Virus record (IMG/VR): IMGVR_UViG_3300042261_002390
Location: 1-64,000 of that record
Strand: one strand, 5' to 3'
Length of the DNA: 64,000 nucleotides
This document shows, in pieces, positions 5,646 through 27,997 of this stretch. Both the position numbers and the translations under genes were made by a program. The notes below the pieces were generated by a model that saw only the letters and a list, made by a program, of their open reading frames with translations, was not told the origin of the DNA and did no database searches. Each line of letters starts with the position of its first letter. Positions within the stretch are counted from its first letter, which is position 1.

Positions 5646-6422
5646 ATGTACAACGAAGCTGATGATAAAAAAACACATAAATCTGGCATATACGTAATTA
5701 AAAATATAATTAACAATAAAATATATGTTGGTCAAACTATTAATATTATTGAAAATAGAATAAAAAGGCATCAATACGAATTGAAAAATAATAAACATGC
5801 TAATATTTATCTACAAAGAGAATTTAATAAGTTTGGTATACATTGTTTTGAATTTAATATATTATATTTCGGCATAATAACTATTGATGAATTAAATGAA
5901 ATTGAAATTAATCTAATTCAAAAATATAAATCGAATGATGAGAATTTTGGTTATAACATCTTACTTGGCGGTAAAAATCAAAAATTACCAGAAACTGTAA
6001 AAAATAAAATAAGCAAATCGTTGTTAAATAATAAATTTACATCAAAAAAAATTGTTCAATATGATATACAAACCGGAAATATTCTTAAAACATGGGATTC
6101 GTTTAATGAAATTAAACGTCAGCTTGGGTTCAATATAGGAAATATTGCCCAATGTTGTAAATTAAATCCGCAATATCCACATTCAAATAAATTTGGTTGG
6201 AGATATTTAGATGATTACGAAAAATCAAATAAAAATGATTTAATGTATGATTTAAATTCAAAAAAACATAAAAAAATTATTGCAATAAACTGTGATGAAA
6301 TAATAGAATTTAAATCAATAAAAGAGGCTGAAGTTTATTTTAATGTTCACAGAAAATTCATACATAGAGTATTATCAGGAAAAAGAAAAAAATATCATAA
6401 TTATGAATTTAAATATGTATAA
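5646..6422 (+). CDS. Free-standing GIY-YIG homing endonuclease
   Basis: SGIYVIKNIINNKIYVGQT (GIY-YIG), HANIYLQREFNKFG, GYNILLGG, NUMOD-like ETVKNKISKS and C-terminal HTH (FKSIKEAEVYFNV). Confidence 0.9.
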   Translation: MYNEADDKKTHKSGIYVIKNIINNKIYVGQTINIIENRIKRHQYELKNNKHANIYLQREFNKFGIHCFEFNILYFGIITIDELNEIEINLIQKYKSNDENFGYNILLGGKNQKLPETVKNKISKSLLNNKFTSKKIVQYDIQTGNILKTWDSFNEIKRQLGFNIGNIAQCCKLNPQYPHSNKFGWRYLDDYEKSNKNDLMYDLNSKKHKKIIAINCDEIIEFKSIKEAEVYFNVHRKFIHRVLSGKRKKYHNYEFKYV

Positions 6423-16769: not shown

Positions 16770-19700
16770 TTATTGAATATTAATAGTATACATTGAATTA
16801 TATTTTGCTTTATCTGGATTTAATTCACTTGATGCACCTTGAACAATTTCCCCAATACTTTGAGATGAAAGCGGTGTATTATAATTAGTTTCATCCGAAC
16901 TACCACCCTGAAATCCCATACCAGCAGCAGGATTTAATACTCTAGGCATTGGGTATCTTAATATTTTTGTGCCAGAAAAACTAGTTTTCATACTATTCGC
17001 ATTAATTTCATGCTCGACTGAAACAATTAAATATGCTCCATTATATAGTGGTACATTATCTAATTGAAAGTATTGTGTTGGTTGAATCATTGCATTCCCA
17101 AGTCCACTAATAGTTGCTTTATATGCACGATTTTCATATAAATTATATAGATTTTGTCCTTTTGGAATTGGTGCATTTTTACCCTCATCCCCAGCCAACC
17201 TAGCTAATATTTGTATTGATTCGTTGGTTTCCGGGTATTCTTTGCTGTCAATTTTAATGCTACTAAACATCGACTGATTTTGTTGCCCAAATTTGACGTT
17301 AAATGCACGTACTTGTCTCCAAGGAAAATTACTACTATTTCGTTGGTATTGACTATCATATTCAGGATTTGGTACACTGTTTGAGCTAAATTCTTTAGCA
17401 TCAGTAGTCCCAATATTAAGAATTCCATCATTTTTAAATCCGTTATTAATATTGGTTGGGTAACTTGATGAACCACCAATGTACATGCACACAAATGCCG
17501 ATGTTTGCTCAACTTCACCAACAGGGTCTATTTTAAACGTGTCTGTCCAACTATTATCACTATATGTCATGAAATTTTGTAATGGAAAAAATTCAAACCC
17601 ATTCATTGATAATATTTGAGCTAAAACACTATAAACCGAAACATTTGTATCATTAAATAAATCAAGTAATATTTCCGGGTTAATAACAGTATCGCCAATA
17701 GGATTCATCGCTCTATCGACAAAAGCAAAAGAGTCAATTAATTCTTTATTTGGTTTATTGAATGGATATCCGTCGTTTGCACCTAATTTTCTTTCAGGCG
17801 AACACAGCCATTTATCATTAATATTTTTAAACGAATAATATGTTTGTGTTAATATATCCTCATCACCACTTAATTTTTTCGTTTCTTCATCTTCCTTAAT
17901 TTTTTTATTCTCTTTAGCAACCAATTCACTACCAATTCTCTCCATCAGACCTTTAAAATATCTATCATTAACGGCTTTTTTATTTGCATTCAAATTTACG
18001 TTAATTAATGAATCGTATTTTTCTTTTTTCGGCACATTTTTAAAAGTATTTTGACTAAAGATAACTATATTTGTTTTTGTCAATAATTGTCCTAAGATTG
18101 GTTTGAAAAAACTACCATGATTTTCAGGATTTTCTGTTTTAGGATTTAAATATGACTCATATGCAGTATATTTATTCATTTTTTTACTATTCACTAACGA
18201 TTTAACTTCATTATACATCAGTTTTAATTGTGCTCTCATCGTTAGGTAATAACTAGTTCTAAAAACCTCATATTTAGCAGCAAATGTTTCTTTATCTTTT
18301 TCAGACAATATTTTATCAATATCTTCGATATCAGCAAACATATATAAATTAACCAATCCATTGAATTTAGAGCCACCACCAGTACTATAAAATGCTTTTA
18401 ATTCATCAAGTAAGCCGTTATTTTTTGCATTAACCAATCCACCAATATAATATTGAAGATAGTTAGGTACTTCAACAACCGCAGGTGTTTGAAAAATTAC
18501 ATGATTTAAATTTTTTGGGTAAATATTAAAACAACTTAAAGTGTATCCAAAATTTGATAGTAAGATTATCGCACTTAAATCAGATTCAGTATTAATAACA
18601 TCATCAAATAAATCATCATCATATGCAGATAAAGTTTTTATCCACCTATCTACAACATTTGAAAACGATTTTAACCCATAATTTTCAGAAGGTGGATTTA
18701 AACCCAATTCAGCAAATCCAGCATTACCCTTATCCAATAACACCTCAATCGCAGCGTTTGCTGTTTTTTCATTATTGAATGATGCGACACTTGTTAAATA
18801 TCTAGTCTGCAATGAAATGCCTTCAAAATCGTCAATTTCTTCGTCATTAACAGCATTATTTTTAACGAAAGCATCTTTGATAAAAATAAGATTTTGCGTA
18901 GTGAATAAATATGATTCTTCCGGTAATCTGCCATTAAATAATTTTTTAAAAAAGCCTCGTTCTACAGTACTAACAAAAATATCAAGTGGTTTACTACCAT
19001 CAGCAGTTGGCTGTTGTAAATCTATTGCCTCATCAACAATATTTAACCCAACATAATTTGGGTTTGTCTTATCAACATATGCACCATTAATATTGTCGAT
19101 GCTTTCTACTCCAAACTCCGGAAATGCATAAACATCAGTTAAATTATTACTCAAATATTTATAAAAATTATCCGGATTTTTATTATTATTTGCAAATGTT
19201 TTTAAATTACTAGATAATCCAGTATTATTAATCGATAATATTAAATTCAATGCTTCTGATTTTGAATATAAATCAACATATGCGCCATTTGCTTCAGTTA
19301 CGTTATTATAGAAACCATCAGGCAATGAACTTTGAGTTAGCACGTAAAATCTGTCTAGCAATATTTTTAATATTTGGTTTATCCTACTATCTGCACTAAG
19401 ATTAACCGACCCGGTAGTTGAATCAATATTAGAATATGGCGATGCTGGATTATTTGTAGATAATGATGAATCAAATGGGGATATTGGTATCCACACATTA
19501 TTACCTTCAGCATCAGTTTCTTCTTTCATCATCGCATCTGCAGCTTTTTGTCTTTGCAAAGTAAACGTATCTATGAACTTAGTAACTAACTGCATTTCAG
19601 GGAATGGGTCTGAAGCAGGTAAACTTTTATTAATTAATATTGGTGATATTCTAACTTCTTGGTCATTATTCTGTTTGCTGATAATTAGTGGAAATGCATA

Positions 19701-21296
19701 TATGTTATCATTGAGATTATCATTACCACTATCTCTCATACCATAATTAGCAATAATTCTTTTAAAATCAGGCTTATTATGGTGGTCTTGTGCAGATATT
19801 GATGTTGCCCTTAAAATATTGAAGAATTTATCAACATCATTCAATATTATTTTAAAGATGTTATATATGGTGGGTCTCATACCCAAAGTTTGCTCAATTG
19901 AATTATTAATTTTCTCATTAATTGATTTAGCTACATCTTTTTTGCTTTTTTCAATATCAATTTTCGATTTATATAATTTAACATAAAAATCAGTAACATC
20001 AAGAACAGCATATTTTAGTTCAAGATTTGAGTTGTTTGAATTGGTAGATAAATCAAAATTATTGTAAATCACCGTTAATGAAATATCGCTATTAACAATA
20101 CTTCCCTTAGTACCGCTCATAGCACCACTTGTTAATAATTGTGTACGATATATATCCAATCTATTGTTAAGAATAGCTATATTGCTTGGGTTTGAAATAT
20201 ATCCAACATATAATCTTTTAGATGTAGTACTTGGAGTATCTGTAGCATTAAAATTCTTAATAACATCATCATATTCGTAAATTGTTTTTAGTGGGGTGAT
20301 AACATTATCACCAACTTTACTTGTTGCAGGAGGATTTGCAATAGAATAAGATAGCGATGCATCAATATATTGACCTACAACACCTGATATTAAATTTTCA
20401 TAACCAATAGGTTGTGATGAGGCACTTGTATCACTAATAAACACATATGGAATTGCATTTCCATCACTTTTTAATGCATCATAAAAATTAGCTAACGCTT
20501 CTGTTGCTGTTTTATTTGCTTGTAGCTCGTTATTTAATGCATCATATTTATCACTATCACTATTTGTTTTAAGCTGCTTATCGACAACGCTATATAAATT
20601 TCTCAATTTTAAAATCAAATCATTTGTATTTGCAGGAGGCTGCGAAGTGTCTGAATTTATAGATTGGGCATTATTATCCATTAATGGAAAATTAACGATA
20701 TATCTAAACAATACATCACTCAACGGTGCAAACGTAATCGCAACAAATTCACCATTAATAATAAAATTACCACTTTCTGAACTAAATTCAGTGGTATATT
20801 TTACCAAATGTAGTTTATAGCTTAATGTTCTACCATAATAACCCTTAATTTTTAATTCAAAAGTTGGTGGTGGAAAATCAAACAATATTCTATATGGTGA
20901 ATTTTCTTGGTTAAAGAATGATAAACCTCTCAAGTCAACAAATTGTATTGATACTTGAGGAATAAATGATGAATTAATAACTACTTTAATATTAGTAATA
21001 CCAAATGATTCAAATTGTGTTTCATTATTCATTGTACTACCATCATAATAATTTGTGGTAAAATTAAGATAATTTGGATTGTCAGGATTTTGATTGTTTC
21101 CTAAAAAATTTACAATTACATCAACATCAGTTTTTAAACCTTCACCAACCACGATAACACTTCTTCCTTTCCTAGAAGCAGTTAATTCAGCAAATATGTG
21201 CATATCCTGATATTGTGGAATTGCATTAGGTATTGCAGTATTAATGTTAACACTGTTTGGGTCATCTAAATATTTGATATTGTTTTGACTTGGCAT
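16770..21296 (-). CDS. Very large baseplate hub-like protein (gp27/GPD-type C-terminus)
   Basis: ~1508 aa; N-terminal FGITNIKV...SIQFVDLRG; C-terminal ATISGLGNAMIQPTQYFQL...GAYLIVSVEHEI...TSFSG typical of hub proteins; start MPSQ at 21296 follows the late motif (21313-21321, minus strand). Confidence 0.6.
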   Translation of the reverse strand: MPSQNNIKYLDDPNSVNINTAIPNAIPQYQDMHIFAELTASRKGRSVIVVGEGLKTDVDVIVNFLGNNQNPDNPNYLNFTTNYYDGSTMNNETQFESFGITNIKVVINSSFIPQVSIQFVDLRGLSFFNQENSPYRILFDFPPPTFELKIKGYYGRTLSYKLHLVKYTTEFSSESGNFIINGEFVAITFAPLSDVLFRYIVNFPLMDNNAQSINSDTSQPPANTNDLILKLRNLYSVVDKQLKTNSDSDKYDALNNELQANKTATEALANFYDALKSDGNAIPYVFISDTSASSQPIGYENLISGVVGQYIDASLSYSIANPPATSKVGDNVITPLKTIYEYDDVIKNFNATDTPSTTSKRLYVGYISNPSNIAILNNRLDIYRTQLLTSGAMSGTKGSIVNSDISLTVIYNNFDLSTNSNNSNLELKYAVLDVTDFYVKLYKSKIDIEKSKKDVAKSINEKINNSIEQTLGMRPTIYNIFKIILNDVDKFFNILRATSISAQDHHNKPDFKRIIANYGMRDSGNDNLNDNIYAFPLIISKQNNDQEVRISPILINKSLPASDPFPEMQLVTKFIDTFTLQRQKAADAMMKEETDAEGNNVWIPISPFDSSLSTNNPASPYSNIDSTTGSVNLSADSRINQILKILLDRFYVLTQSSLPDGFYNNVTEANGAYVDLYSKSEALNLILSINNTGLSSNLKTFANNNKNPDNFYKYLSNNLTDVYAFPEFGVESIDNINGAYVDKTNPNYVGLNIVDEAIDLQQPTADGSKPLDIFVSTVERGFFKKLFNGRLPEESYLFTTQNLIFIKDAFVKNNAVNDEEIDDFEGISLQTRYLTSVASFNNEKTANAAIEVLLDKGNAGFAELGLNPPSENYGLKSFSNVVDRWIKTLSAYDDDLFDDVINTESDLSAIILLSNFGYTLSCFNIYPKNLNHVIFQTPAVVEVPNYLQYYIGGLVNAKNNGLLDELKAFYSTGGGSKFNGLVNLYMFADIEDIDKILSEKDKETFAAKYEVFRTSYYLTMRAQLKLMYNEVKSLVNSKKMNKYTAYESYLNPKTENPENHGSFFKPILGQLLTKTNIVIFSQNTFKNVPKKEKYDSLINVNLNANKKAVNDRYFKGLMERIGSELVAKENKKIKEDEETKKLSGDEDILTQTYYSFKNINDKWLCSPERKLGANDGYPFNKPNKELIDSFAFVDRAMNPIGDTVINPEILLDLFNDTNVSVYSVLAQILSMNGFEFFPLQNFMTYSDNSWTDTFKIDPVGEVEQTSAFVCMYIGGSSSYPTNINNGFKNDGILNIGTTDAKEFSSNSVPNPEYDSQYQRNSSNFPWRQVRAFNVKFGQQNQSMFSSIKIDSKEYPETNESIQILARLAGDEGKNAPIPKGQNLYNLYENRAYKATISGLGNAMIQPTQYFQLDNVPLYNGAYLIVSVEHEINANSMKTSFSGTKILRYPMPRVLNPAAGMGFQGGSSDETNYNTPLSSQSIGEIVQGASSELNPDKAKYNSMYTINIQ

Positions 21297-21397
21297 ATTA
21301 TTGGATTTTTTATATAAATACGAACCCACAAAAATTACAAAATTATAATAATTATTGAAACTATTTAACTATTTATATCCATAATATATTAACATAA

Positions 21398-22810: not shown

Positions 22811-24433
22811 ATGGCAGACGAAGAAAAAACATCAATTATTAAAGAAGCATTAGCTGATTTAAATGCTATTAGAGAAGCTGCGGAACTTAATGCCATGAAA
22901 AGATTGGCTCAAAGCAATCCGAATAACTTCGATAAATTGTTAAAAGAAGAATTAAATAAAAATAAAAAAGCAAAAGAATCTTATAAAAAAATAGATGATG
23001 CTGAAGAGTCTGAGCAATCAGATAAAACAAAATTAAAAAACGAATCTGATATGAAGAATCAAGCAAATGAGACCGTAAAGGTTGTTGACACAGTTGGAAA
23101 AGGCGAACCTTTTGAAAAAAAGGTTAAAGGTGGTAAACCTGTAGAAGAAGATGTACACATTAAAAAAGGTGGTGGTGTAACCATTACTGACACTATCGGA
23201 AAAAGCGACCCATTTTCTGAAAAGAAAAAAGGTCAAAAAATCGAAGAAGAACGTGAAAAAGATTTTATGGGCGATGTTGAAAGCGATACTCCAAACCAAG
23301 CTAAAGGCGAAACAGGTAAAGGTGTTGCATTTAAGGAAAAAATTAAACCACCTACTGTAGGTAAACCTATTTCAAATTTGAAAGAAGAATTCAACATTTC
23401 AGAACTTGACATGAGTACTGTAGGTACTGCATTGGATAATGCCGACGAAGAAGATGAAATCATCACTATTGATGAAATCGAAGAAGAAATTCAAGGCATG
23501 AGTGGATTACCCCGTCCTGAATTACAGAAACGTGGCGAACCACTTGGACAAACAGGTGATGCTTATCAACAATTAGTTAGTATGAGAAATCAAATTGACG
23601 AAATGTTAAAAGGTATGAATCCTGAAGAAGAAAGTGCTGGCATGGAAGAAGAAGGTATGGAAGAAGGCGATGATATTACTACTGCTGATATTGAATCAGT
23701 ATTAGGTTCAGCACCGGAAGAAGAAGAAGAGGAAGAAGAATCTTACGCTCCTGAAGAAGAAGAGGAAGAAGAATCTTATTTACCTGAACAGGAAGAAGAA
23801 GAAACTTATAAACCTGAAATCGAAGAAGCTTTAGGCGTTTCACATGCAACAAATAAAATTACAACAGCTCATAATCCACGTCCTGCGTATGCTAGTAGTC
23901 CAGCAGCAGTTGAAAGAAGAAGACCATCGACACAAGGCATGTATGAAAGCAAGAAATTTAATAGTTTAATTGAAGAAAACAAAAAGTTAACTAAAAAATT
24001 GAACGAAACAAAAAAATTGAAAGATTCTGCTACGTCATTGGTTGAAAGCTACAAAACAGCACTCGAAAAATATCGCAATCAATTGAAAGAAATGGCAGTT
24101 TTCAACACCAATTTAGCACACGTTAATAATTTATTGGTAAATGAAAGCTTGGCATTAACTCAAGATGATAAAATTAAAATTATCAACGGATTTAAAAAAG
24201 TTGATAGTATTACTGAATCACAGAATGTTTATAAAACTTTCTTAACAGAAATGAATGAAAGTGGTAAAAAAACAATTTCTGAAGGTATTAAAGGTAAAGT
24301 ATCAGCCTCGATACAGCCATCTTCAAAACAAAAACTTGATGAAGTAGTCGAAAAAACAGCATATTCAAATAATGAGCATGTTTCACGCATGAAAAATCTT
24401 ATTGAATATGTAGAAAAAAGAGGTAAAAAATAA
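22811..24433 (+). CDS. Prohead core/scaffold protein
   Basis: Acidic, coiled-coil protein between protease and MCP; C-terminal RMKNL motif. Confidence 0.75.
   Translation: MADEEKTSIIKEALADLNAIREAAELNAMKRLAQSNPNNFDKLLKEELNKNKKAKESYKKIDDAEESEQSDKTKLKNESDMKNQANETVKVVDTVGKGEPFEKKVKGGKPVEEDVHIKKGGGVTITDTIGKSDPFSEKKKGQKIEEEREKDFMGDVESDTPNQAKGETGKGVAFKEKIKPPTVGKPISNLKEEFNISELDMSTVGTALDNADEEDEIITIDEIEEEIQGMSGLPRPELQKRGEPLGQTGDAYQQLVSMRNQIDEMLKGMNPEEESAGMEEEGMEEGDDITTADIESVLGSAPEEEEEEEESYAPEEEEEEESYLPEQEEEETYKPEIEEALGVSHATNKITTAHNPRPAYASSPAAVERRRPSTQGMYESKKFNSLIEENKKLTKKLNETKKLKDSATSLVESYKTALEKYRNQLKEMAVFNTNLAHVNNLLVNESLALTQDDKIKIINGFKKVDSITESQNVYKTFLTEMNESGKKTISEGIKGKVSASIQPSSKQKLDEVVEKTAYSNNEHVSRMKNLIEYVEKRGKK
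23714..23818 (+). repeat. Three coding repeats PE(E/Q)EEEE(S/T)Y
   Basis: GAAGAAGAGGAAGAAGAATCTTA repeated twice plus a variant. Confidence 0.85.
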
Positions 24434-24461: not shown

Positions 24462-26144
24462 ATGGGATTTTTAACAGAAAGTGCTGAAGTTGGTAATATC
24501 GGATTAAAACAACTTCGTGAGCAAAGAGAAATTACAACTAACCGTTGGGAAAAAATCGGTTTATTGGAAGGTTTGGAAGGTAATGTAAAAGAAAATTGTG
24601 CTCAATTATTTGAAAATCAATTGTCTTATATGATTAACGAATCTTCAGATTCGACCAATTCAGGTCAATTTGAAACCGTAGCGTTCCCGGTTATCCGAAG
24701 AGTATTTGCAAAATTACTTGCTAACGACATCGTGTCGGTTCAAGCATTGAATTTACCTATTGGTAAATTGTATTACATTAACCCAAAAGCTAGTGTTCGT
24801 GTACAAGATGGTACTCATACAAACGTAGCTGGTCTTGAGCATACTTCACCTGATGGTGCTTATGGTAATGCTGCAACAAAACCATCAACTTCAAGAACAC
24901 AGTTCGAAACTCGTTCATTATACGATGCATTCTATGCAAGTGAATATAATGAAGAAGGTACTTCATTGTTCGACCGTTCAAAAGGTGACATGACTGTTCA
25001 CACTGGTGCAACTTCTGCATCTACTTTCGTTATCGGTACTGATAAATTTATCACTGTACAAATTGGTGGTTTCTTGGTAGCAGATTCAGGTAAATTAGTA
25101 GGTCCTGCTGGTGTTCAGATGGATACTGAATCATTCCTTGCTTCTTTGAAAATTACTGCTGATGCTGACTTAGTAGCTCCTGCTGGATTTACTGACCAAA
25201 ACATTCCTGCTGGTTCTTCAATTCCTTTCAACGTAAAGGTACAGAAATACGGTCAGGCAATCGTTGACAAAGCTGGTATTATTACTTTAGTTGTTGACGT
25301 TCAGTATGCCGGAACTAATGGATATCAACCATTGAGTGCTACAACTACTCCTACATTCAACTACGAATATAGAAGTTATTCAGACCTTGAAGAAGATTCA
25401 AGAATGGCTGAAGTTACTTTCCAACTTGACCAAGTTACTGTTTCCGTAGAAACTCGTAAAATGCGTGCTATGTGGACACCTGAATTAGCTCAGGACGTTA
25501 GTGCATTCCATAACATTGATGCTGAAGCTGAATTAACTGCTTTATTGTCAGAACAAATGGCTGCTGAAATCGACCGTGAAATTCTTCGTGACCTTCGTAG
25601 AGGTGCTGCTTGGACTGCTCGTTGGGACTACAACGGATTGCGTCGTCAATCAAATACTTACTATGGAACACAAAAAGACTGGAATCAGACATTAATCACT
25701 AAGATTAACCAGATTTCTGCTCAAATCCATAAAGCTACTCTTCGTGGTGGTGCATCTTGGGTTGTTGTTTCTCCTGAAGTAAGTGCTGTATTCGATGACC
25801 TTGAATACTTCCACGTATCAAACGCTGCTCCTGAACAGGACAAATATAACATGGGTATCGAAAAAATCGGTACATTGAGTGGACGTTACATCGTTTACCG
25901 TGACCCATATTCACCTGCTAATACTATCCTTATTGGACACAAAGGTAATAGCATCTTAGAGACCGGTTACATATACGCTCCATACGTACCAATGCAGTTA
26001 ACTCCTGTAATGTACAACCCATTCGATTTCACTCCTATTCGTGGTATCATGACTCGTTATGCTAAGAAAATGGTATTGAACCGTTACTACGGACGTATCT
26101 ATTGCGATGGTCTTCAAACTTTTGGTATTGGTGATTTGCAATAA
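24462..26144 (+). CDS. Major capsid protein (T4 gp23-like)
   Basis: VRRVF-like PVIRRVF, DIVSVQAL, TRKMRAMWTPELAQDVSAFHNIDAEAELTALLSEQMAAEIDREI, GYIYAPYVP, RGIMTRYA. Confidence 0.97.
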   Translation: MGFLTESAEVGNIGLKQLREQREITTNRWEKIGLLEGLEGNVKENCAQLFENQLSYMINESSDSTNSGQFETVAFPVIRRVFAKLLANDIVSVQALNLPIGKLYYINPKASVRVQDGTHTNVAGLEHTSPDGAYGNAATKPSTSRTQFETRSLYDAFYASEYNEEGTSLFDRSKGDMTVHTGATSASTFVIGTDKFITVQIGGFLVADSGKLVGPAGVQMDTESFLASLKITADADLVAPAGFTDQNIPAGSSIPFNVKVQKYGQAIVDKAGIITLVVDVQYAGTNGYQPLSATTTPTFNYEYRSYSDLEEDSRMAEVTFQLDQVTVSVETRKMRAMWTPELAQDVSAFHNIDAEAELTALLSEQMAAEIDREILRDLRRGAAWTARWDYNGLRRQSNTYYGTQKDWNQTLITKINQISAQIHKATLRGGASWVVVSPEVSAVFDDLEYFHVSNAAPEQDKYNMGIEKIGTLSGRYIVYRDPYSPANTILIGHKGNSILETGYIYAPYVPMQLTPVMYNPFDFTPIRGIMTRYAKKMVLNRYYGRIYCDGLQTFGIGDLQ

Positions 26145-26163: not shown

Positions 26164-26194
26164 AAAAAGGTTGCATATTATGCAACCTTTTTTT
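26164..26194 (+). terminator. Intrinsic terminator after the MCP gene
   Basis: AAAAAGGTTGCAT-AT-TATGCAACCTTTTTTT palindrome. Confidence 0.85.
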
Positions 26195-26201
26195 ATCTTT
26201 G
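26171..26201 (+). promoter_or_regulatory. Bacteroidota-type sigma promoter (TTG-N20-TATCTTTG)
   Basis: TTG 26171-73 and TAnnTTTG 26194-26201; matches the known Bacteroides -33/-7 consensus; overlaps the terminator. Confidence 0.6.
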
Positions 26202-26230
26202 TACGTGTTTATGCATAAACACATAGTTTT

Positions 26231-27688
26231 ATGGTTTCATATCAATATAAAATTAGAAAAGAAAAAGAATTGTCTGAAGTGCTTGATTTTGATATTAATC
26301 ATGTAAATCTACATAATACGACAATAAGAGAAATTAATAAAAAAACAGCAACAAAAATAATATTAGAGTATGAATATTTACATTCAATGCCTTTTGCTTG
26401 TAAATATTTTTTTGGGATATATTTTAATATTAATAATTGTGAATATTTGGGAGGTGTTTTAGTTTTTGGCAATGAATATTCTGAAAATACTGGTGCTTGG
26501 CAAAAATATGGATACGAAGATAAGATTCTGCTATTAAGTCGTGGGGTTTGTTTATGGTGGACACCAAAAAATACAGCATCATATTTTATTAGCAGGGTTT
26601 GTGATATACTAAAAAAAACCACCAACTATAAAATAATTACAGCTACTGTAGACCCTGCTGCTGGTGAGATTGGGACAATTTATCAATCATTAAATTGGTA
26701 TTATGTTGGCTTAATGAGTGGCAATTATCATGGTAATAAAATGGCAACTCGATTCGGAGTTATAATCAATGGTAAATTACGATTGTCACGGTGGATACGT
26801 AATAAAATAGGTAGTATGCGCCGTGAAGAAATTTTAAAGCATTATCCGGATGCTATATTTGTACCACAATACAGAAAACAAAGATATTTTTATTTCATCG
26901 GTAATAAAACAGAAAATAGAAAACTTATTAATAGTATTAAGCATCTATTATTACCATATCCCAAAAGAAATAATCAGATTTCAGGAATAATTTATTTAAT
27001 AAAAAATGAAATTAACAATAAAATATATGTAGGGCAAACAATTCGTTCATTACGTGATAGAATTCGTGAATATGAAAAAGGATTTGGCAATGTATATTTA
27101 AACAATGCATTTAAAAAATATGGTTGGAGTAATTTTAAATTTGAAGTAATTGATACTGCAGAGAATTTGGAAGAATTAAATGAAAAGGAAATCTCTTACA
27201 TTAAAAAATATAATTCAAACAATAAAGAATTTGGGTATAATATTGAATCCGGTGGAAAAAATGCAATTCCTGATACTGAGACGTTAGAGAAAATGTCTAA
27301 ATCACATTTAGGCATTGTTCAATCTGAAGAATGGATTAACAGAAGAATAGCTAAAGCAGGTACTGATGAAGCAAAAAAATACGGTAAAACAAAAACAGAG
27401 GATGAAAAAACACAATTAAGTATTAATTCTCCAAAATATTGGAAAGGTAAATCTCGTGATACTAAGACTAAAGAAAAAATCAGTAAAACAAAACTTGAGA
27501 ATGGATTGTCTGAAAAACAAAAAGAAGTATTATTAAAAAAAGTATATAAAGTAGATATTATCAACAATACTACAATAGAATATGAGTCAACATTATCTGC
27601 ATCAATAGCAGAAAACGTAAATCAATCTACAATATCAAGACGATGTTCGAAAAATAAAATAATAAAAAACATATTGTGGAAATATTAA
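26231..27688 (+). CDS. Mom-family DNA-modification (GNAT-like) domain fused to a GIY-YIG homing endonuclease
   Basis: N-half: EYLH...GVLVFG...LSR...KNTASYFI...VDPAAGEIGTIYQSLNWYYVG...KQRY...YPK (Mom pattern); C-half: GIIYLIKNEINNKIYVGQT, GYNIESGG, NUMOD3-like repeats, C-terminal HTH. Confidence 0.75.
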   Translation: MVSYQYKIRKEKELSEVLDFDINHVNLHNTTIREINKKTATKIILEYEYLHSMPFACKYFFGIYFNINNCEYLGGVLVFGNEYSENTGAWQKYGYEDKILLLSRGVCLWWTPKNTASYFISRVCDILKKTTNYKIITATVDPAAGEIGTIYQSLNWYYVGLMSGNYHGNKMATRFGVIINGKLRLSRWIRNKIGSMRREEILKHYPDAIFVPQYRKQRYFYFIGNKTENRKLINSIKHLLLPYPKRNNQISGIIYLIKNEINNKIYVGQTIRSLRDRIREYEKGFGNVYLNNAFKKYGWSNFKFEVIDTAENLEELNEKEISYIKKYNSNNKEFGYNIESGGKNAIPDTETLEKMSKSHLGIVQSEEWINRRIAKAGTDEAKKYGKTKTEDEKTQLSINSPKYWKGKSRDTKTKEKISKTKLENGLSEKQKEVLLKKVYKVDIINNTTIEYESTLSASIAENVNQSTISRRCSKNKIIKNILWKY

Positions 27689-27714
27689 AGGGTCGGTAAT
27701 TCCGACCCTTTTTT
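27687..27714. terminator. Bidirectional intrinsic terminator
   Basis: AAAGGGTCGG-TAATT-CCGACCCTTTTTT between convergent genes. Confidence 0.85.
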
Positions 27715-27997
27715 ATTCTTCTAATTCAACCTTCTGAATATAATTAAAACCTTCAGATAAATTATCATACACTTCTCGCCTGATTTTTAATTTATCGTGT
27801 ATCGTAGATATTGTCGTTCTTATTACATTTAAATCAATGTCAGATGTAGTAACACTAATCTCTTCAGTAGAAAAATCAATCCAGCCATGTGATTTAGTTC
27901 TATATTTACCAGTAAACACCAAACTATCTTTCAATGGATGATACACAACTTCAATTTTTTCACGCTCATTTTTTTCAACAACAATTGTCCATTTCAT
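27713..27997 (-). CDS. Hypothetical protein
   Basis: 94-aa ORF with AGGAGA upstream on the minus strand. Confidence 0.55.
   Translation of the reverse strand: MKWTIVVEKNEREKIEVVYHPLKDSLVFTGKYRTKSHGWIDFSTEEISVTTSDIDLNVIRTTISTIHDKLKIRREVYDNLSEGFNYIQKVELEE

What the first reader, a model, noticed from the sequence alone, without database searches (positions are those of the whole stretch)
26231..27688. Mom-like DNA-modification domain fused to a GIY-YIG homing endonuclease
Residues 1-~245 follow the Mom-family pattern and end at the family's typical YPK terminus (~26957-26965). They continue in-frame into a complete GIY-YIG, NUMOD3 and HTH endonuclease. Mu Mom acetyl/carbamoyl-modifies adenine to block restriction (established knowledge). 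A single polypeptide that could both modify and cut DNA suggests a self-immunising selfish element, or a phage-versus-phage exclusion system that marks its own genome and cleaves unmarked competitors (inference). It has its own host-type promoter and terminator, making it a self-contained cassette right after the capsid gene. Motif deviations (EYEYLH for HY, ATVD...GEIG for SYAD...GHxG) may mean altered chemistry or a degenerate binding-only domain.
Basis: partly seen in the sequence, partly recalled or inferred. Interest (0 to 1): 0.85.

Follow-up and report, generated by a model that had tools for sequence, protein, structure and literature searches.

The report
Mobile Mom–GIY-YIG nuclease cassette in phage
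A large T4-like phage carries, just after its capsid gene, a mobile gene that fuses a DNA-adenine-modifying enzyme (Mom type) to a homing-type DNA-cutting enzyme; the fusion is real and widespread but comes and goes between near-identical phages, and it is a new variant of a pairing already noted in jumbo phages.

Summary
ORF 26231-27688 (+, 485 aa, no stop) has a full-length Mom domain (Pfam 87 bits; best PDB fold match is Mu Mom 8BV8) joined by about 6 residues to an I-TevI/Seg-type GIY-YIG nuclease with a DNA-binding tail.

It is not an artefact. More than 100 clusters at 48-78% identity carry the same fusion, and 114 of 120 keep both catalytic sets.

It is not a fixed phage gene either. 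Among 80 phages with 76-100% identical capsids, the slot after the gp23-type capsid gene holds one of the following:
- nothing (31 loci);
- this fusion (16);
- the same nuclease chassis behind a second, Hef-type Mom-like GNAT domain (16);
- a bare nuclease (6).

Occupancy is scattered at random on the capsid tree. This is how a free-standing homing endonuclease behaves; T4 segD sits in the same place.

The H58-to-E and R151-to-A deviations also occur in stand-alone relatives, so they are not decay.

Whether modification blocks the protein's own nuclease is untested. Bare nucleases exist, and lesions are symmetric (3 in each domain), so strict dependence is not supported.

Iyer et al. 2021 already described Mom-nuclease fusions in jumbo phages, with the same idea. 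I rate this a new variant of a known kind, of moderate interest.

The parts
24462..26144 (+). Upstream flank: gp23-type major capsid protein gene. It is the conserved left border of the polymorphic slot.
   Evidence: Pfam Gp23 E 3.7e-73. It is 76-100% identical in the 80 loci L007-L086.
26164..26192 (+). Hairpin terminator after the capsid gene. The 'GTTGCA/GTTGGA' stem variant is typical of filled sites.
   Evidence: Terminator scan. Junction comparison of filled and empty sites.
26194..26230 (+). Conserved cassette leader (TATCTTTG ... GCATAAACACATA ... ATG). It is a possible Bacteroidota-type -7 promoter element, but this is unverified.
   Evidence: The leader is shared by Mom-type and Hef-GNAT-type cassettes. 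The motif is not enriched in the window and no sigma-70 signal appears.
26231..26965 (+). Mom-family GNAT domain, residues 1-245. The Mu-equivalent catalytic residues are R104 (26540-42), S117 (26579-81), D141 (26651-53) and Y151 (26681-83). Subfamily-specific residues are E48 (26372-74) and E146. A predicted HTH-like insertion spans roughly residues 174-204. The domain ends in YPK (26957-65).
26966..26983 (+). Six-residue linker (RNNQIS) between the Mom C-terminus and the first GIY-YIG strand.
   Evidence: Alignment A1 and AF2 secondary structure.
26984..27250 (+). GIY-YIG catalytic domain, residues 252-340. The active-site residues are Y255 (26993-95), Y266, R277, Y281, E320 and N337, equivalent to I-TevI Y6, Y17, R27, H31, E75 and N90.
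27251..27688 (+). I-TevI/Seg-like DNA-binding tail, residues 341-485. It consists of low-confidence helical NUMOD-like repeats followed by a C-terminal strand-strand-helix-helix module, then the stop codon.
   Evidence: PHROG 314 match runs to residue 485. NUMOD3 and NUMOD1 are called in relatives. AF2 model. It is the least conserved part, with mean pairwise identity 0.53.
27687..27711 (+). Hairpin terminator shared with the convergent downstream gene. It corresponds to the single original hairpin seen in empty sites.
27713..27997 (-). Downstream flank: convergent 94-aa gene of unknown function. It is the right border of the slot. In empty-site relatives it lies 59-95 bp from the capsid stop codon.
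   Evidence: No Pfam hit.

Best explanation
The gene encodes one polypeptide with two apparently active enzymes. The first is an N-terminal Mom-family GNAT, which in Mu acylates adenine N6 in double-stranded DNA using glycyl-tRNA. The second is a C-terminal I-TevI/Seg-type GIY-YIG endonuclease with its own sequence-reading tail.

The gene sits on a cassette of about 1.5 kb (terminator, leader, gene). The cassette occupies the intergenic slot between the gp23-type capsid gene and a convergent small gene, in a clade of T4-like jumbo phages (contigs up to about 365 kb, possibly infecting Bacteroidota).

Shown here:
- The fusion is real, conserved and catalytically intact.
- The cassette is present, absent or replaced among near-identical phages, as a free-standing homing endonuclease gene would be.
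- The nuclease chassis exchanges its N-terminal domain between two different Mom-like GNATs.

Inferred:
- In mixed infections the nuclease cuts cassette-less relatives near the slot, and recombinational repair copies the cassette in.
- The tethered Mom domain acylates adenines at or around the nuclease's recognition region, and perhaps more widely. This reduces re-cutting of carrier DNA and possibly host restriction, which gives the phage a reason to keep the element.
For: - Reality and conservation: more than 100 clusters, 48-78% identical, on contigs up to 340 kb. The protein atlas has a 53-member viral 'GIY-YIG/Mom' cluster.
- Folds: 8BV8 Mom E 2e-9 and I-TevI TM 0.78.
- Catalytic residues: R104, S117, D141 and Y151 are kept in 118-119 of 120 relatives. 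Y255, Y266, R277, E320 and N337 are kept in 117-120 of 120. Both sets are intact in 114 of 120.
- Mobility: among 80 loci with capsids 76-100% identical, 31 are empty, 16 carry the Mom fusion, 16 the alternative-GNAT fusion and 6 a bare nuclease.
- Scattered distribution: the Mom label needs 15 changes for 16 rows on the capsid tree, and 416 of 500 shuffles do as well.
- Closest filled/empty pair: L017 is filled and L018 is empty, with nearly identical capsids.
- Empty sites: a single hairpin and a 59-95 bp gap.
- Shared leader: Mom-type and alternative-type cassettes have the same upstream leader.
- Domain swap: L040 (Mom) and L058 (Hef-type GNAT) share a tail that is about 90% identical, while their N-terminal halves are unrelated.
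- Recurrence of the pairing: Hef-type homing endonucleases combine an REase-fold nuclease with a Mom-like GNAT. Iyer et al. 2021 noted Mom-REase fusions in jumbo phages.
- Positional precedent: T4 segD is a free-standing GIY-YIG gene between genes 23 and 24 (PMC2988022).
Against: - No activity, cleavage site or DNA modification has been measured.
- Bare nuclease modules occur in the same slot without any GNAT: L011, L012 and L063. The nuclease can therefore be carried without a fused modifier.
- Lesions are symmetric, 3 Mom-only and 3 nuclease-only. A modifier that its nuclease depends on would predict an asymmetry.
- Mom-plus-DNA-binding-tail proteins without a nuclease form stable families: P0098, P0123 and a 51-member atlas cluster. 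Mom can therefore also use the tail on its own.
- The co-conversion signal in the capsid gene is weak. Only 2 of 837 columns pass correction.
- Mu's essential R151 and important H58 are replaced, so the chemistry or substrate may differ from Mu Mom.
Confidence: 0.55

Rival explanations
1. Hitch-hiking anti-restriction payload. The Mom domain protects the phage genome from host restriction and has no functional link to the nuclease. The homing nuclease only spreads it, and the fusion keeps payload and driver from being separated by recombination.
For: - Stand-alone members of the same Mom subfamily (45-58% identical) are common in phages and prophages at other loci.
- Bare nucleases and nuclease-less Mom proteins both exist.
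- The slot also carries unrelated cargo in some phages, L024-L028.
- Pairing of a homing endonuclease with a beneficial gene has been proposed for other large phages (PMC12619734) and for SegB (PMC13096335, abstract).
Against: - Payloads that travel with homing endonucleases are normally separate ORFs.
- Here at least two nuclease folds are fused in-frame to Mom-like GNATs: GIY-YIG in this family and an REase/Vsr-like fold in Hef. PHROG 559 is also annotated HNH.
- The linker is short and the fusion is kept over about 50% sequence divergence.
- These points suggest coupling rather than chance linkage.
Confidence: 0.25
2. Restriction-modification-like weapon, the model of Iyer et al. 2021. The nuclease degrades unmodified host or superinfecting-phage DNA broadly, while momylation protects the carrier genome. 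Under this model it is not a homing element.
For: - The model is published for Mom-REase fusions in jumbo phages.
- From my own knowledge, T4 EndoII (DenA) is a GIY-YIG nuclease that attacks unmodified host DNA and spares modified phage DNA.
- Both domains are catalytically intact.
Against: - The nuclease is of the I-TevI/Seg type, with a long sequence-reading tail typical of site-specific homing enzymes.
- Occupancy is random among near-identical phages at one fixed site, which is not expected for a core weapon.
- Bare nucleases exist without a modifier.
- A second Seg-like gene without Mom lies in the same window at 5646-6422.
Confidence: 0.08
3. The Mom domain is catalytically silent. It serves only as an extra DNA-binding, base-flipping or dimerisation module for the homing nuclease.
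For: - Mu's essential R151 is missing and H58 is Glu.
- Mu Mom has a DNA-binding HTH-like insertion and forms dimers.
Against: - The equivalents of R111, S124, D149 and Y159 are invariant in 118-119 of 120 relatives.
- The same deviations occur in stand-alone homologues that have no nuclease to assist.
- Mom is the most conserved part of the protein, 0.655 against 0.625 and 0.528.
- Mu's dimer residue W48 is not conserved.
Confidence: 0.07
4. The fusion is an assembly or sequencing artefact, or a recent accidental read-through of two genes.
For: None found.
Against: The same full-length architecture occurs in more than 100 independent clusters from JGI, ENA, Logan and NCBI assemblies, at 48-78% identity, and in 16 IMG/VR loci.
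Confidence: 0.01

Closest known systems
Bacteriophage Mu Mom (PDB 8BV8; Pfam PF25680)
   Same: - GNAT fold with a Mom-specific HTH-like insertion.
- Best PDB fold hit, E 2e-9, TM 0.70.
- Full-length Pfam match.
- Equivalents of R111, S124, D149, Y159 and Y59, and the C-terminal PYPK, are kept.
   Different: - About 20% identity.
- H58 is Glu, the essential R151 is Ala or variable, R154 is Glu, and the dimer residue W48 is not kept.
- It is fused to a nuclease.
- It lies in a lytic T4-like jumbo phage rather than a transposable temperate phage.
- I did not see a com-like regulator upstream.
- The acyl donor is unknown.
I-TevI and the free-standing Seg endonucleases of T4-like phages, especially segD (between genes 23 and 24)
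   Same: - GIY-YIG catalytic domain with all key residues, TM 0.78 to 1MK0.
- N-terminal catalytic domain followed by an extended DNA-binding tail.
- Free-standing cassette with its own regulatory signals in an intergenic slot next to a conserved gene.
- Sporadic presence among relatives.
- Same position after the capsid gene as T4 segD (PMC2988022).
   Different: - It carries a 245-residue Mom domain in front of the nuclease.
- Its orientation is co-directional with the capsid gene, whereas T4 segD is antisense.
- Cleavage site and homing have not been demonstrated.
Hef-type (EDxHD / Vsr-like REase) homing endonucleases, i.e. the 'Mom fused to REase-fold endoDNase' proteins of jumbo phages (Iyer et al. 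2021)
   Same: - A homing-type nuclease and a Mom-like GNAT in one polypeptide.
- Found in T4-like and jumbo phages.
- The Hef-type GNAT even replaces Mom on the same GIY-YIG chassis at the same slot in sister phages.
   Different: - Different nuclease fold (REase/Vsr-like against GIY-YIG).
- Opposite domain order (nuclease then GNAT).
- The GNAT is a different, more divergent family: a weak Pfam Mom hit only for true Hef proteins, E 1.5e-4, and none for the domain at this slot; not significant by hhalign against Mu Mom.
- Hef of phage U5 has demonstrated endonuclease activity (cited).
Single-chain restriction-modification enzymes (Type IIG/IIC). This is a functional analogy from my own knowledge and was not tested.
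   Same: One polypeptide combines a DNA-modifying domain, a DNA-cutting domain and shared target recognition.
   Different: - The modifier is a GNAT acyltransferase, not a SAM methyltransferase.
- The nuclease is of homing type.
- The element is phage-borne and mobile.
- No evidence yet that the modification blocks cutting.

Membership tests
Mom family (PF25680; Mu Mom-like DNA adenine N6-acyltransferases) | Profile match above the curated threshold over the full domain | tested here: met
   87.1 bits against a cut-off of 27.1, profile 2-202/202. PHROG 1384 E 2.7e-27.
Mom family (PF25680; Mu Mom-like DNA adenine N6-acyltransferases) | GNAT fold with the Mom-specific HTH-like insertion | tested here: met
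   In the AF2 model the best PDB hit is 8BV8, E 2e-9, TM 0.70, ahead of generic GNATs. A predicted hairpin plus two helices at about residues 174-204 align to the Mu insertion region. This is model-level evidence only.
Mom family (PF25680; Mu Mom-like DNA adenine N6-acyltransferases) | Essential residues R111, S124 and D149, plus Y159 and Y59 (Mu numbering) | tested here: met
   R104, S117, D141 and Y151 are invariant or nearly so, 118-119 of 120. Y49 is Y or W.
Mom family (PF25680; Mu Mom-like DNA adenine N6-acyltransferases) | Essential R151 and important H58 (Mu numbering) | tested here: not met
   Position 143 is A, M, S or L. Position 48 is an invariant Glu. The same holds in stand-alone subfamily members. 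Whether these two residues define the family or only Mu's branch is unknown.
Mom family (PF25680; Mu Mom-like DNA adenine N6-acyltransferases) | Transfers glycine from Gly-tRNAGly to N6 of adenine in dsDNA, giving 6-NcmdA | not testable with these tools
   Needs biochemistry. No tRNA gene is present in the 64-kb window.
GIY-YIG homing endonucleases (I-TevI / Seg type) | GIY-YIG fold and catalytic residues (I-TevI Y6, Y17, R27, E75, N90) | tested here: met
   PF01541 E 3e-9. PDB 1LN0/1MK0 by sequence, E 4e-5, and by fold, TM 0.78 and rmsd 2.1. Y255, Y266, R277, E320 and N337 are kept in 117-120 of 120. The R27 equivalent is assigned from the conserved R-x-x-x-[YH] pattern; HMMER's own alignment is ambiguous in this helix, placing S273 at R27 and R277 at H31.
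GIY-YIG homing endonucleases (I-TevI / Seg type) | C-terminal modular DNA-binding region (NUMOD repeats or HTH) | tested here: inconclusive
   PHROG 314 and 7168 alignments cover the tail, and relatives carry NUMOD3 or NUMOD1. Pfam calls no NUMOD in the window protein, and the AF2 linker region has low confidence.
GIY-YIG homing endonucleases (I-TevI / Seg type) | Sporadic presence/absence at a fixed site among close relatives, with intact empty sites | tested here: met
GIY-YIG homing endonucleases (I-TevI / Seg type) | Cleaves cassette-less DNA near its own insertion site and homes by gene conversion | not testable with these tools
   There is only a weak linkage signal at the 3' end of the capsid gene.
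Mom-endonuclease 'momylation R-M-like' fusions of jumbo phages (Iyer et al. 2021) | Mom-family domain fused to an endoDNase in a group-2 (T4-like, gp23 capsid) jumbo phage | tested here: met
   Described in PMC7824862.
Mom-endonuclease 'momylation R-M-like' fusions of jumbo phages (Iyer et al. 2021) | The nuclease partner is of the REase (PD-(D/E)xK) fold | tested here: not met
   The partner here is GIY-YIG. That paper does not mention GIY-YIG.
Mom-endonuclease 'momylation R-M-like' fusions of jumbo phages (Iyer et al. 2021) | Modification protects DNA from the fused nuclease | not testable with these tools
   Indirect evidence is neutral to negative: bare nucleases exist and lesions are symmetric.

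The most novel reading that the evidence does not exclude
A broad class of phage homing endonucleases carries a Mom-like GNAT that chemically marks adenines in the enzyme's own target region. The class would include the GIY-YIG Seg-like enzymes described here and the Hef/EDxHD type in T4-like, Campylobacter, AR9-like and Lak phages.

The result would be a self-immunising homing endonuclease, a hybrid between a homing element and a restriction-modification system. It would explain how free-standing endonucleases that can cut their own unmodified sequence in vitro (reported for Hef) avoid destroying carrier genomes. It would also mean that the DNA-binding tail sets the sequence specificity of a tRNA-dependent DNA acylation.
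Probability: 0.25. Interest if true: 0.8.

Novelty: new variant of a known kind. Interest (0 to 1): 0.55.

Why it matters
Mom chemistry was solved only in 2026, as glycyl-tRNA-dependent acylation of adenine in dsDNA. How Mom-like enzymes choose their sites and donors is still open.

This family offers a natural Mom joined to a sequence-reading homing-nuclease tail, in more than 100 variants. It includes natural nuclease-deleted forms and forms with a swapped GNAT domain. That makes three questions directly testable:
- Does a homing-endonuclease tail target DNA acylation to particular sites?
- Does acylation gate the nuclease?
- Do the E48, A143 and E146 substitutions change the acyl donor?

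It also links two literatures that have not been connected: Hef/Seg homing endonucleases and 'momylation' systems. Finally, it shows that the slot after the capsid gene in T4-like jumbo phages is a hot spot where such cassettes compete.

If the coupling is only hitch-hiking, the finding is still a clear example of a homing element carrying an anti-restriction function.

Tried and rejected
- Megablast of the locus against GenBank phages found nothing. tblastn found no record with both halves in one place. The fusion is therefore absent from deposited phage genomes and known only from metagenomes.
- phmmer of the Mom half against PDB found nothing. A family profile reached 8BV8 only at E 0.077. 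Fold search was needed.
- hhalign of the alternative N-domain against Mu Mom (E 0.11) and against the Mom-fusion family (E 0.27) was not significant. Its GNAT/Mom-like nature rests on the AF2 model plus Foldseek and on a weak Pfam Mom hit in true Hef proteins.
- Vertical inheritance was my first reading, from the conserved synteny. The census and the capsid tree rejected it.
- An R-M-like dependence predicts nuclease-only lesions and no Mom-only lesions. I found 3 of each, so it is not supported.
- The co-conversion test along the capsid gene gave only a weak signal limited to the 3' end.
- The sigma-70 promoter scan was not above chance. TAnnTTTG was not enriched in the window. No tRNA genes were found.
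- Iyer et al. 2009 (PMC2995806) is not held in the library, so I could not check it for earlier mentions of Mom fusion partners.
- The sequencing-artefact explanation was rejected.
Full report
**1. What is in the sequence**

Window 26231-27688 (+) is a single open frame of 485 codons.
- Residues 30-245 match the whole Pfam Mom model: PF25680, 87 bits against a cut-off of 27.1, profile 2-202 of 202.
- Residues 252-331 match GIY-YIG (PF01541).
- PHROG 1384 ('Mom-like DNA modification protein') and PHROG 314 ('homing endonuclease', aligned to residue 485) give the same split.
- The Mom part ends in Y243-P244-K245 (26957-26965). This aligns with the C-terminal PYPK of Mu Mom. Six residues later the first GIY-YIG strand begins.
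- An AlphaFold2 model built on 28 relatives (pLDDT 80) has Mu Mom 8BV8 as its best PDB match (E 2e-9, TM 0.70). The I-TevI catalytic domain follows (1MK0, TM 0.78, rmsd 2.1 A).
- Two hairpin terminators flank the gene, at 26164-26192 and 27687-27711 (2 found, 0.4 expected).

The gene lies between a gp23-type capsid gene (24462-26144) and a convergent 94-aa gene (27713-27997), which is followed by a UvrD-like helicase. A T4-type prohead protease lies upstream.

Two details are not confirmed. Pfam does not call NUMOD3 in this protein, only in relatives. No sigma-70-type promoter stands out.

**2. The fusion is real and both halves look active**

A search of 5.8 billion proteins returned more than 100 distinct clusters with the same full-length Mom plus GIY-YIG architecture. 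Identities range from 48% to 78%. The clusters come from JGI, ENA, Logan and NCBI assemblies, on contigs up to 340 kb. The protein atlas holds an automatically named 53-member viral cluster with both domains. GenBank phage genomes contain neither the locus nor the fusion.

I mapped the residues shown to matter in Mu Mom (Silva et al. 2026, PMC13219725) by profile alignment:

| Mu Mom residue | This protein | Conservation in the family |
|---|---|---|
| R111 | R104 | 118-119 of 120 representatives |
| S124 | S117 | 118-119 of 120 |
| D149 | D141 | 118-119 of 120 |
| Y159 | Y151 | 118-119 of 120 |
| H58 | E48 | invariant Glu |
| R151 (essential in Mu) | A143 | variable |
| R154 | E146 | invariant Glu |

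The three differences are shared by stand-alone homologues of 250-270 aa that are 45-58% identical. They are therefore traits of a Mom subfamily, not decay caused by the fusion. They could mean a different acyl donor.

The nuclease keeps Y255, Y266, R277, Y/H281, E320 and N337. These are the equivalents of I-TevI Y6, Y17, R27, H31, E75 and N90.

Both catalytic sets are intact in 114 of 120 representatives. Three have a lesion only in Mom and three only in the nuclease. Mean pairwise identity is 0.655 for Mom, 0.625 for GIY-YIG and 0.528 for the tail.

**3. It is a mobile cassette, not a fixed phage gene**

The first two relatives I examined had the same gene order, which suggested vertical inheritance. 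I then fetched 80 IMG/VR loci through the capsid protein (76-100% identical, contigs up to 365 kb) and scanned the region after the capsid gene with domain HMMs. The slot contents were:

| Content of the slot after the capsid gene | Loci |
|---|---|
| Nothing of this kind | 31 |
| Mom-GIY-YIG fusion | 16 |
| ~500-aa protein: same nuclease and tail behind a different ~260-aa N-terminal domain | 16 |
| Nuclease and tail alone | 6 |
| Mom match without a nuclease match (L070 in the slot, a 187-aa ORF; L052 further downstream on the opposite strand) | 2 |
| Alternative fusion plus bare nuclease together | 1 |
| Too short to tell | 8 |

- In eight of the empty loci the capsid stop codon is followed by one hairpin, and 59-95 bp later by the convergent small gene.
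- On the capsid tree the Mom label needs 15 changes for 16 carriers. That is no better than shuffled labels (416 of 500 shuffles do as well).
- L017 (filled) and L018 (empty) have almost identical capsids.
- Filled sites of both cassette types share a hairpin variant and a conserved leader upstream of the ATG.
- Some phages carry two such fusions in tandem, with different tails (L002 and L040).
- Some phages carry unrelated small genes in the slot (L024).

This is the pattern expected of free-standing homing endonuclease genes. In T4 itself the GIY-YIG gene segD lies between genes 23 and 24 (Edgell et al. 2010, PMC2988022). The window holds a second Seg-like GIY-YIG gene without Mom at 5646-6422.

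A test for co-conversion found little linkage between capsid polymorphisms and occupancy, except near the 3' end. One synonymous Thr codon about 190 nt before the stop codon reached p = 2.7e-5, but only two of 837 columns pass correction. I treat this as a lead only.

**4. The alternative N-terminal domain is a second Mom-like GNAT, the Hef domain**

- Pfam does not recognise it, and profile comparison with Mu Mom is not significant.
- Its AF2 model (pLDDT 81) has Mu Mom 8BV8 as its best PDB match (E 3e-8), followed by about 150 GNATs.
- It matches the C-terminal 200 residues of PHROGs 3339 and 559, annotated 'homing/HNH endonuclease'.
- By tblastn it matches 222 phage records. These include Campylobacter phage Hef58 and Hef168, 'Hef-like homing endonucleases' of T4-like phages, Dickeya F-LimX, AR9, PA5oct and Lak phages.
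- A real Hef-like protein (Proteus phage SJ_PmiM) has Zn-ribbons, then an REase_MTES_1575 (Vsr-like) nuclease, then this domain. The domain gives a weak Pfam Mom hit (E 1.5e-4) and a strong match to the alternative domain (hhalign E 4e-17).
- Hef-type enzymes were placed in the EDxHD/Vsr-like homing family by Taylor et al. 2011 (PMC3239194).

This REase plus Mom-like architecture fits what Iyer et al. [quoted passage not shown] That paper does not mention GIY-YIG. Full-text searches found no paper describing a Mom-GIY-YIG fusion.

**5. The architecture is modular**

- A tree of the nuclease-plus-tail modules puts Mom-linked and Hef-GNAT-linked modules in two sister groups. Bare nucleases are nested in both groups, and one Hef-GNAT protein (L058) is nested among Mom-linked ones (support 99/96).
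- The proteins from L040 (Mom) and L058 (Hef-GNAT) come from closely related phages. Their tails are about 90% identical, but their N-terminal 245 residues show no detectable similarity.
- P0098 (16 contigs) has a clean deletion of the nuclease core and keeps Mom and the tail.
- Proteins with Mom plus a NUMOD-like tail and no nuclease form their own families (P0123; a 51-member atlas cluster).
- In another related phage, the Mom after the capsid gene carries an unknown N-terminal extension instead (L006).
- In bacterial genomes only stand-alone Mom homologues were found. The one exception is a fused copy on a 9.6-kb contig binned with a Bacteroidales MAG.

**6. How it most likely works**

*Shown:* the protein is a conserved two-enzyme fusion on a mobile cassette at a fixed intergenic site, with both active sites under constraint.

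*Established elsewhere:* Mu Mom acylates adenine N6 in dsDNA and blocks restriction. I-TevI/Seg enzymes cut near their own genes and spread by gene conversion.

*Inferred:* the nuclease drives the cassette into cassette-less relatives during co-infection. The Mom domain, held on the same DNA by the same tail, modifies adenines in or around the nuclease's target, and perhaps more widely. This limits re-cutting of carrier genomes and possibly host restriction.

In-frame fusion of Mom-like GNATs to at least two nuclease folds argues for a functional link. Against a strict dependence, bare nucleases occur in the same slot, lesions are symmetric (3 and 3), and Mom-plus-tail proteins persist without a nuclease. 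The main rival is that Mom is an anti-restriction payload that simply travels with the nuclease.

My estimates:

| Explanation | Probability |
|---|---|
| Mobile homing cassette with functional coupling | 0.55 |
| Hitch-hiking payload | 0.25 |
| Broad R-M-like weapon | 0.08 |
| Catalytically silent Mom | 0.07 |
| Artefact | 0.01 |

**7. Host and promoter**

The leader contains TATCTTTG (26194-26201), which fits the Bacteroidota -7 consensus TAnnTTTG as I recall it. The element is conserved in position in 8 of 11 filled loci inspected. However, the motif is not enriched in the window (114 against 121 expected). The 'host-type promoter' therefore remains unverified.

A recently described lineage of large aquatic phages predicted to infect Flavobacteriia (PMC12619734) may be related. 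I did not test this.

**8. Verdict**

The gene is a new domain-architecture variant (Mom plus a Seg-type GIY-YIG nuclease) of an already noted theme (Mom-like GNAT plus nuclease in jumbo phages).

The evidence added here is that the gene behaves as a homing cassette, that it alternates with a Hef-type GNAT on the same chassis, and that the Hef domain is itself Mom-like. Interest is moderate at 0.55. It would be higher if the modification is shown to gate the nuclease.

Noticed in passing
L015:7742-9277, L057:8083-9594, L058:7785-9299, L073:7695-9257, L077:8063-9568 and about 10 more loci (alignment A2): At the same slot after the capsid gene, sister phages carry a ~500-aa protein with the same GIY-YIG plus tail chassis behind a different ~260-aa N-terminal domain. 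That domain is GNAT-fold, and its best PDB match is Mu Mom (E 3e-8). It is homologous to the conserved domain of Hef-type homing endonucleases.
   Followed up: yes
L087:973-2349 (Proteus phage SJ_PmiM, 'Hef-like homing endonuclease'); L088:889-2361 (Campylobacter phage NCTC12673, Hef168): Annotated Hef homing endonucleases have Zn-ribbons, then a Vsr-like REase domain, then a C-terminal Mom-like GNAT (weak Pfam Mom hit, E 1.5e-4 and 0.014). None of the papers I searched or read says that Hef enzymes carry a Mom-like domain. tblastn found 222 phage records with this domain, with up to 11 copies per genome.
   Followed up: partly
window 5646-6422 (+): A second free-standing Seg-like GIY-YIG endonuclease gene (258 aa; GIY-YIG, NUMOD1 and an I-HmuI NUMOD-like domain) without any Mom domain.
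   Followed up: partly
L002:6297-9485 and L040:7725-10966: Two Mom-GIY-YIG fusion genes lie in tandem after the capsid gene. One is of the ~490-aa class and one of the ~570-aa class. The longer class has a different C-terminal tail (Psq-like HTH), and the gene order differs between the two phages.
   Followed up: partly
P0098 (421 aa, 16 contigs); P0123; protein-atlas cluster 'Mom + I-HmuI NUMOD-like': Natural derivatives have the GIY-YIG core cleanly deleted while Mom and the DNA-binding tail are kept. This suggests Mom can use the homing-endonuclease tail on its own.
   Followed up: partly
Capsid gene, about 190 nt before the stop codon (ILETGY region; approximately window 25950-25960); alignment column 1691: A synonymous Thr codon is ACC in 25 of 29 filled sites but ACA, ACT or ACG in 12 of 15 empty sites scored at this column (p = 2.7e-5), whatever the cassette type. 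It may be a nuclease target or immunity polymorphism, or a co-conversion mark.
   Followed up: partly
L024:7777-8632 (also L025-L028; a similar ~1-kb gap in L030, L031, L045, L046, L051, L056, whose contents I did not examine): In L024, and the four loci with identical capsids, the slot holds two small ORFs: a 160-aa protein with a hydrophobic N-terminus that looks like a signal peptide (by eye; not tested) and a 147-aa protein. The site is therefore a general hot spot for variable cargo.
   Followed up: no
L006:7001-8194 (P0133, 397 aa); P0147 (338 aa): In another related T4-like phage, the gene after the capsid gene is a Mom with an unknown ~180-aa N-terminal extension. P0147 instead has an N-terminal HTH. 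The Mom subfamily therefore combines with several DNA-binding add-ons.
   Followed up: no
window 26164-26201: The capsid terminator hairpin of filled sites contains a TTG about 21 nt upstream of TATCTTTG. The terminator may therefore double as the -33 element of a Bacteroidota-type promoter for the cassette. The motif is not statistically enriched in the window.
   Followed up: partly
window 16770-21329 (-) and 22811-24433 (+): Two large ORFs (1519 aa and 540 aa) next to the head-morphogenesis genes have no Pfam match. Both are conserved in position in relatives (L001, L002).
   Followed up: no
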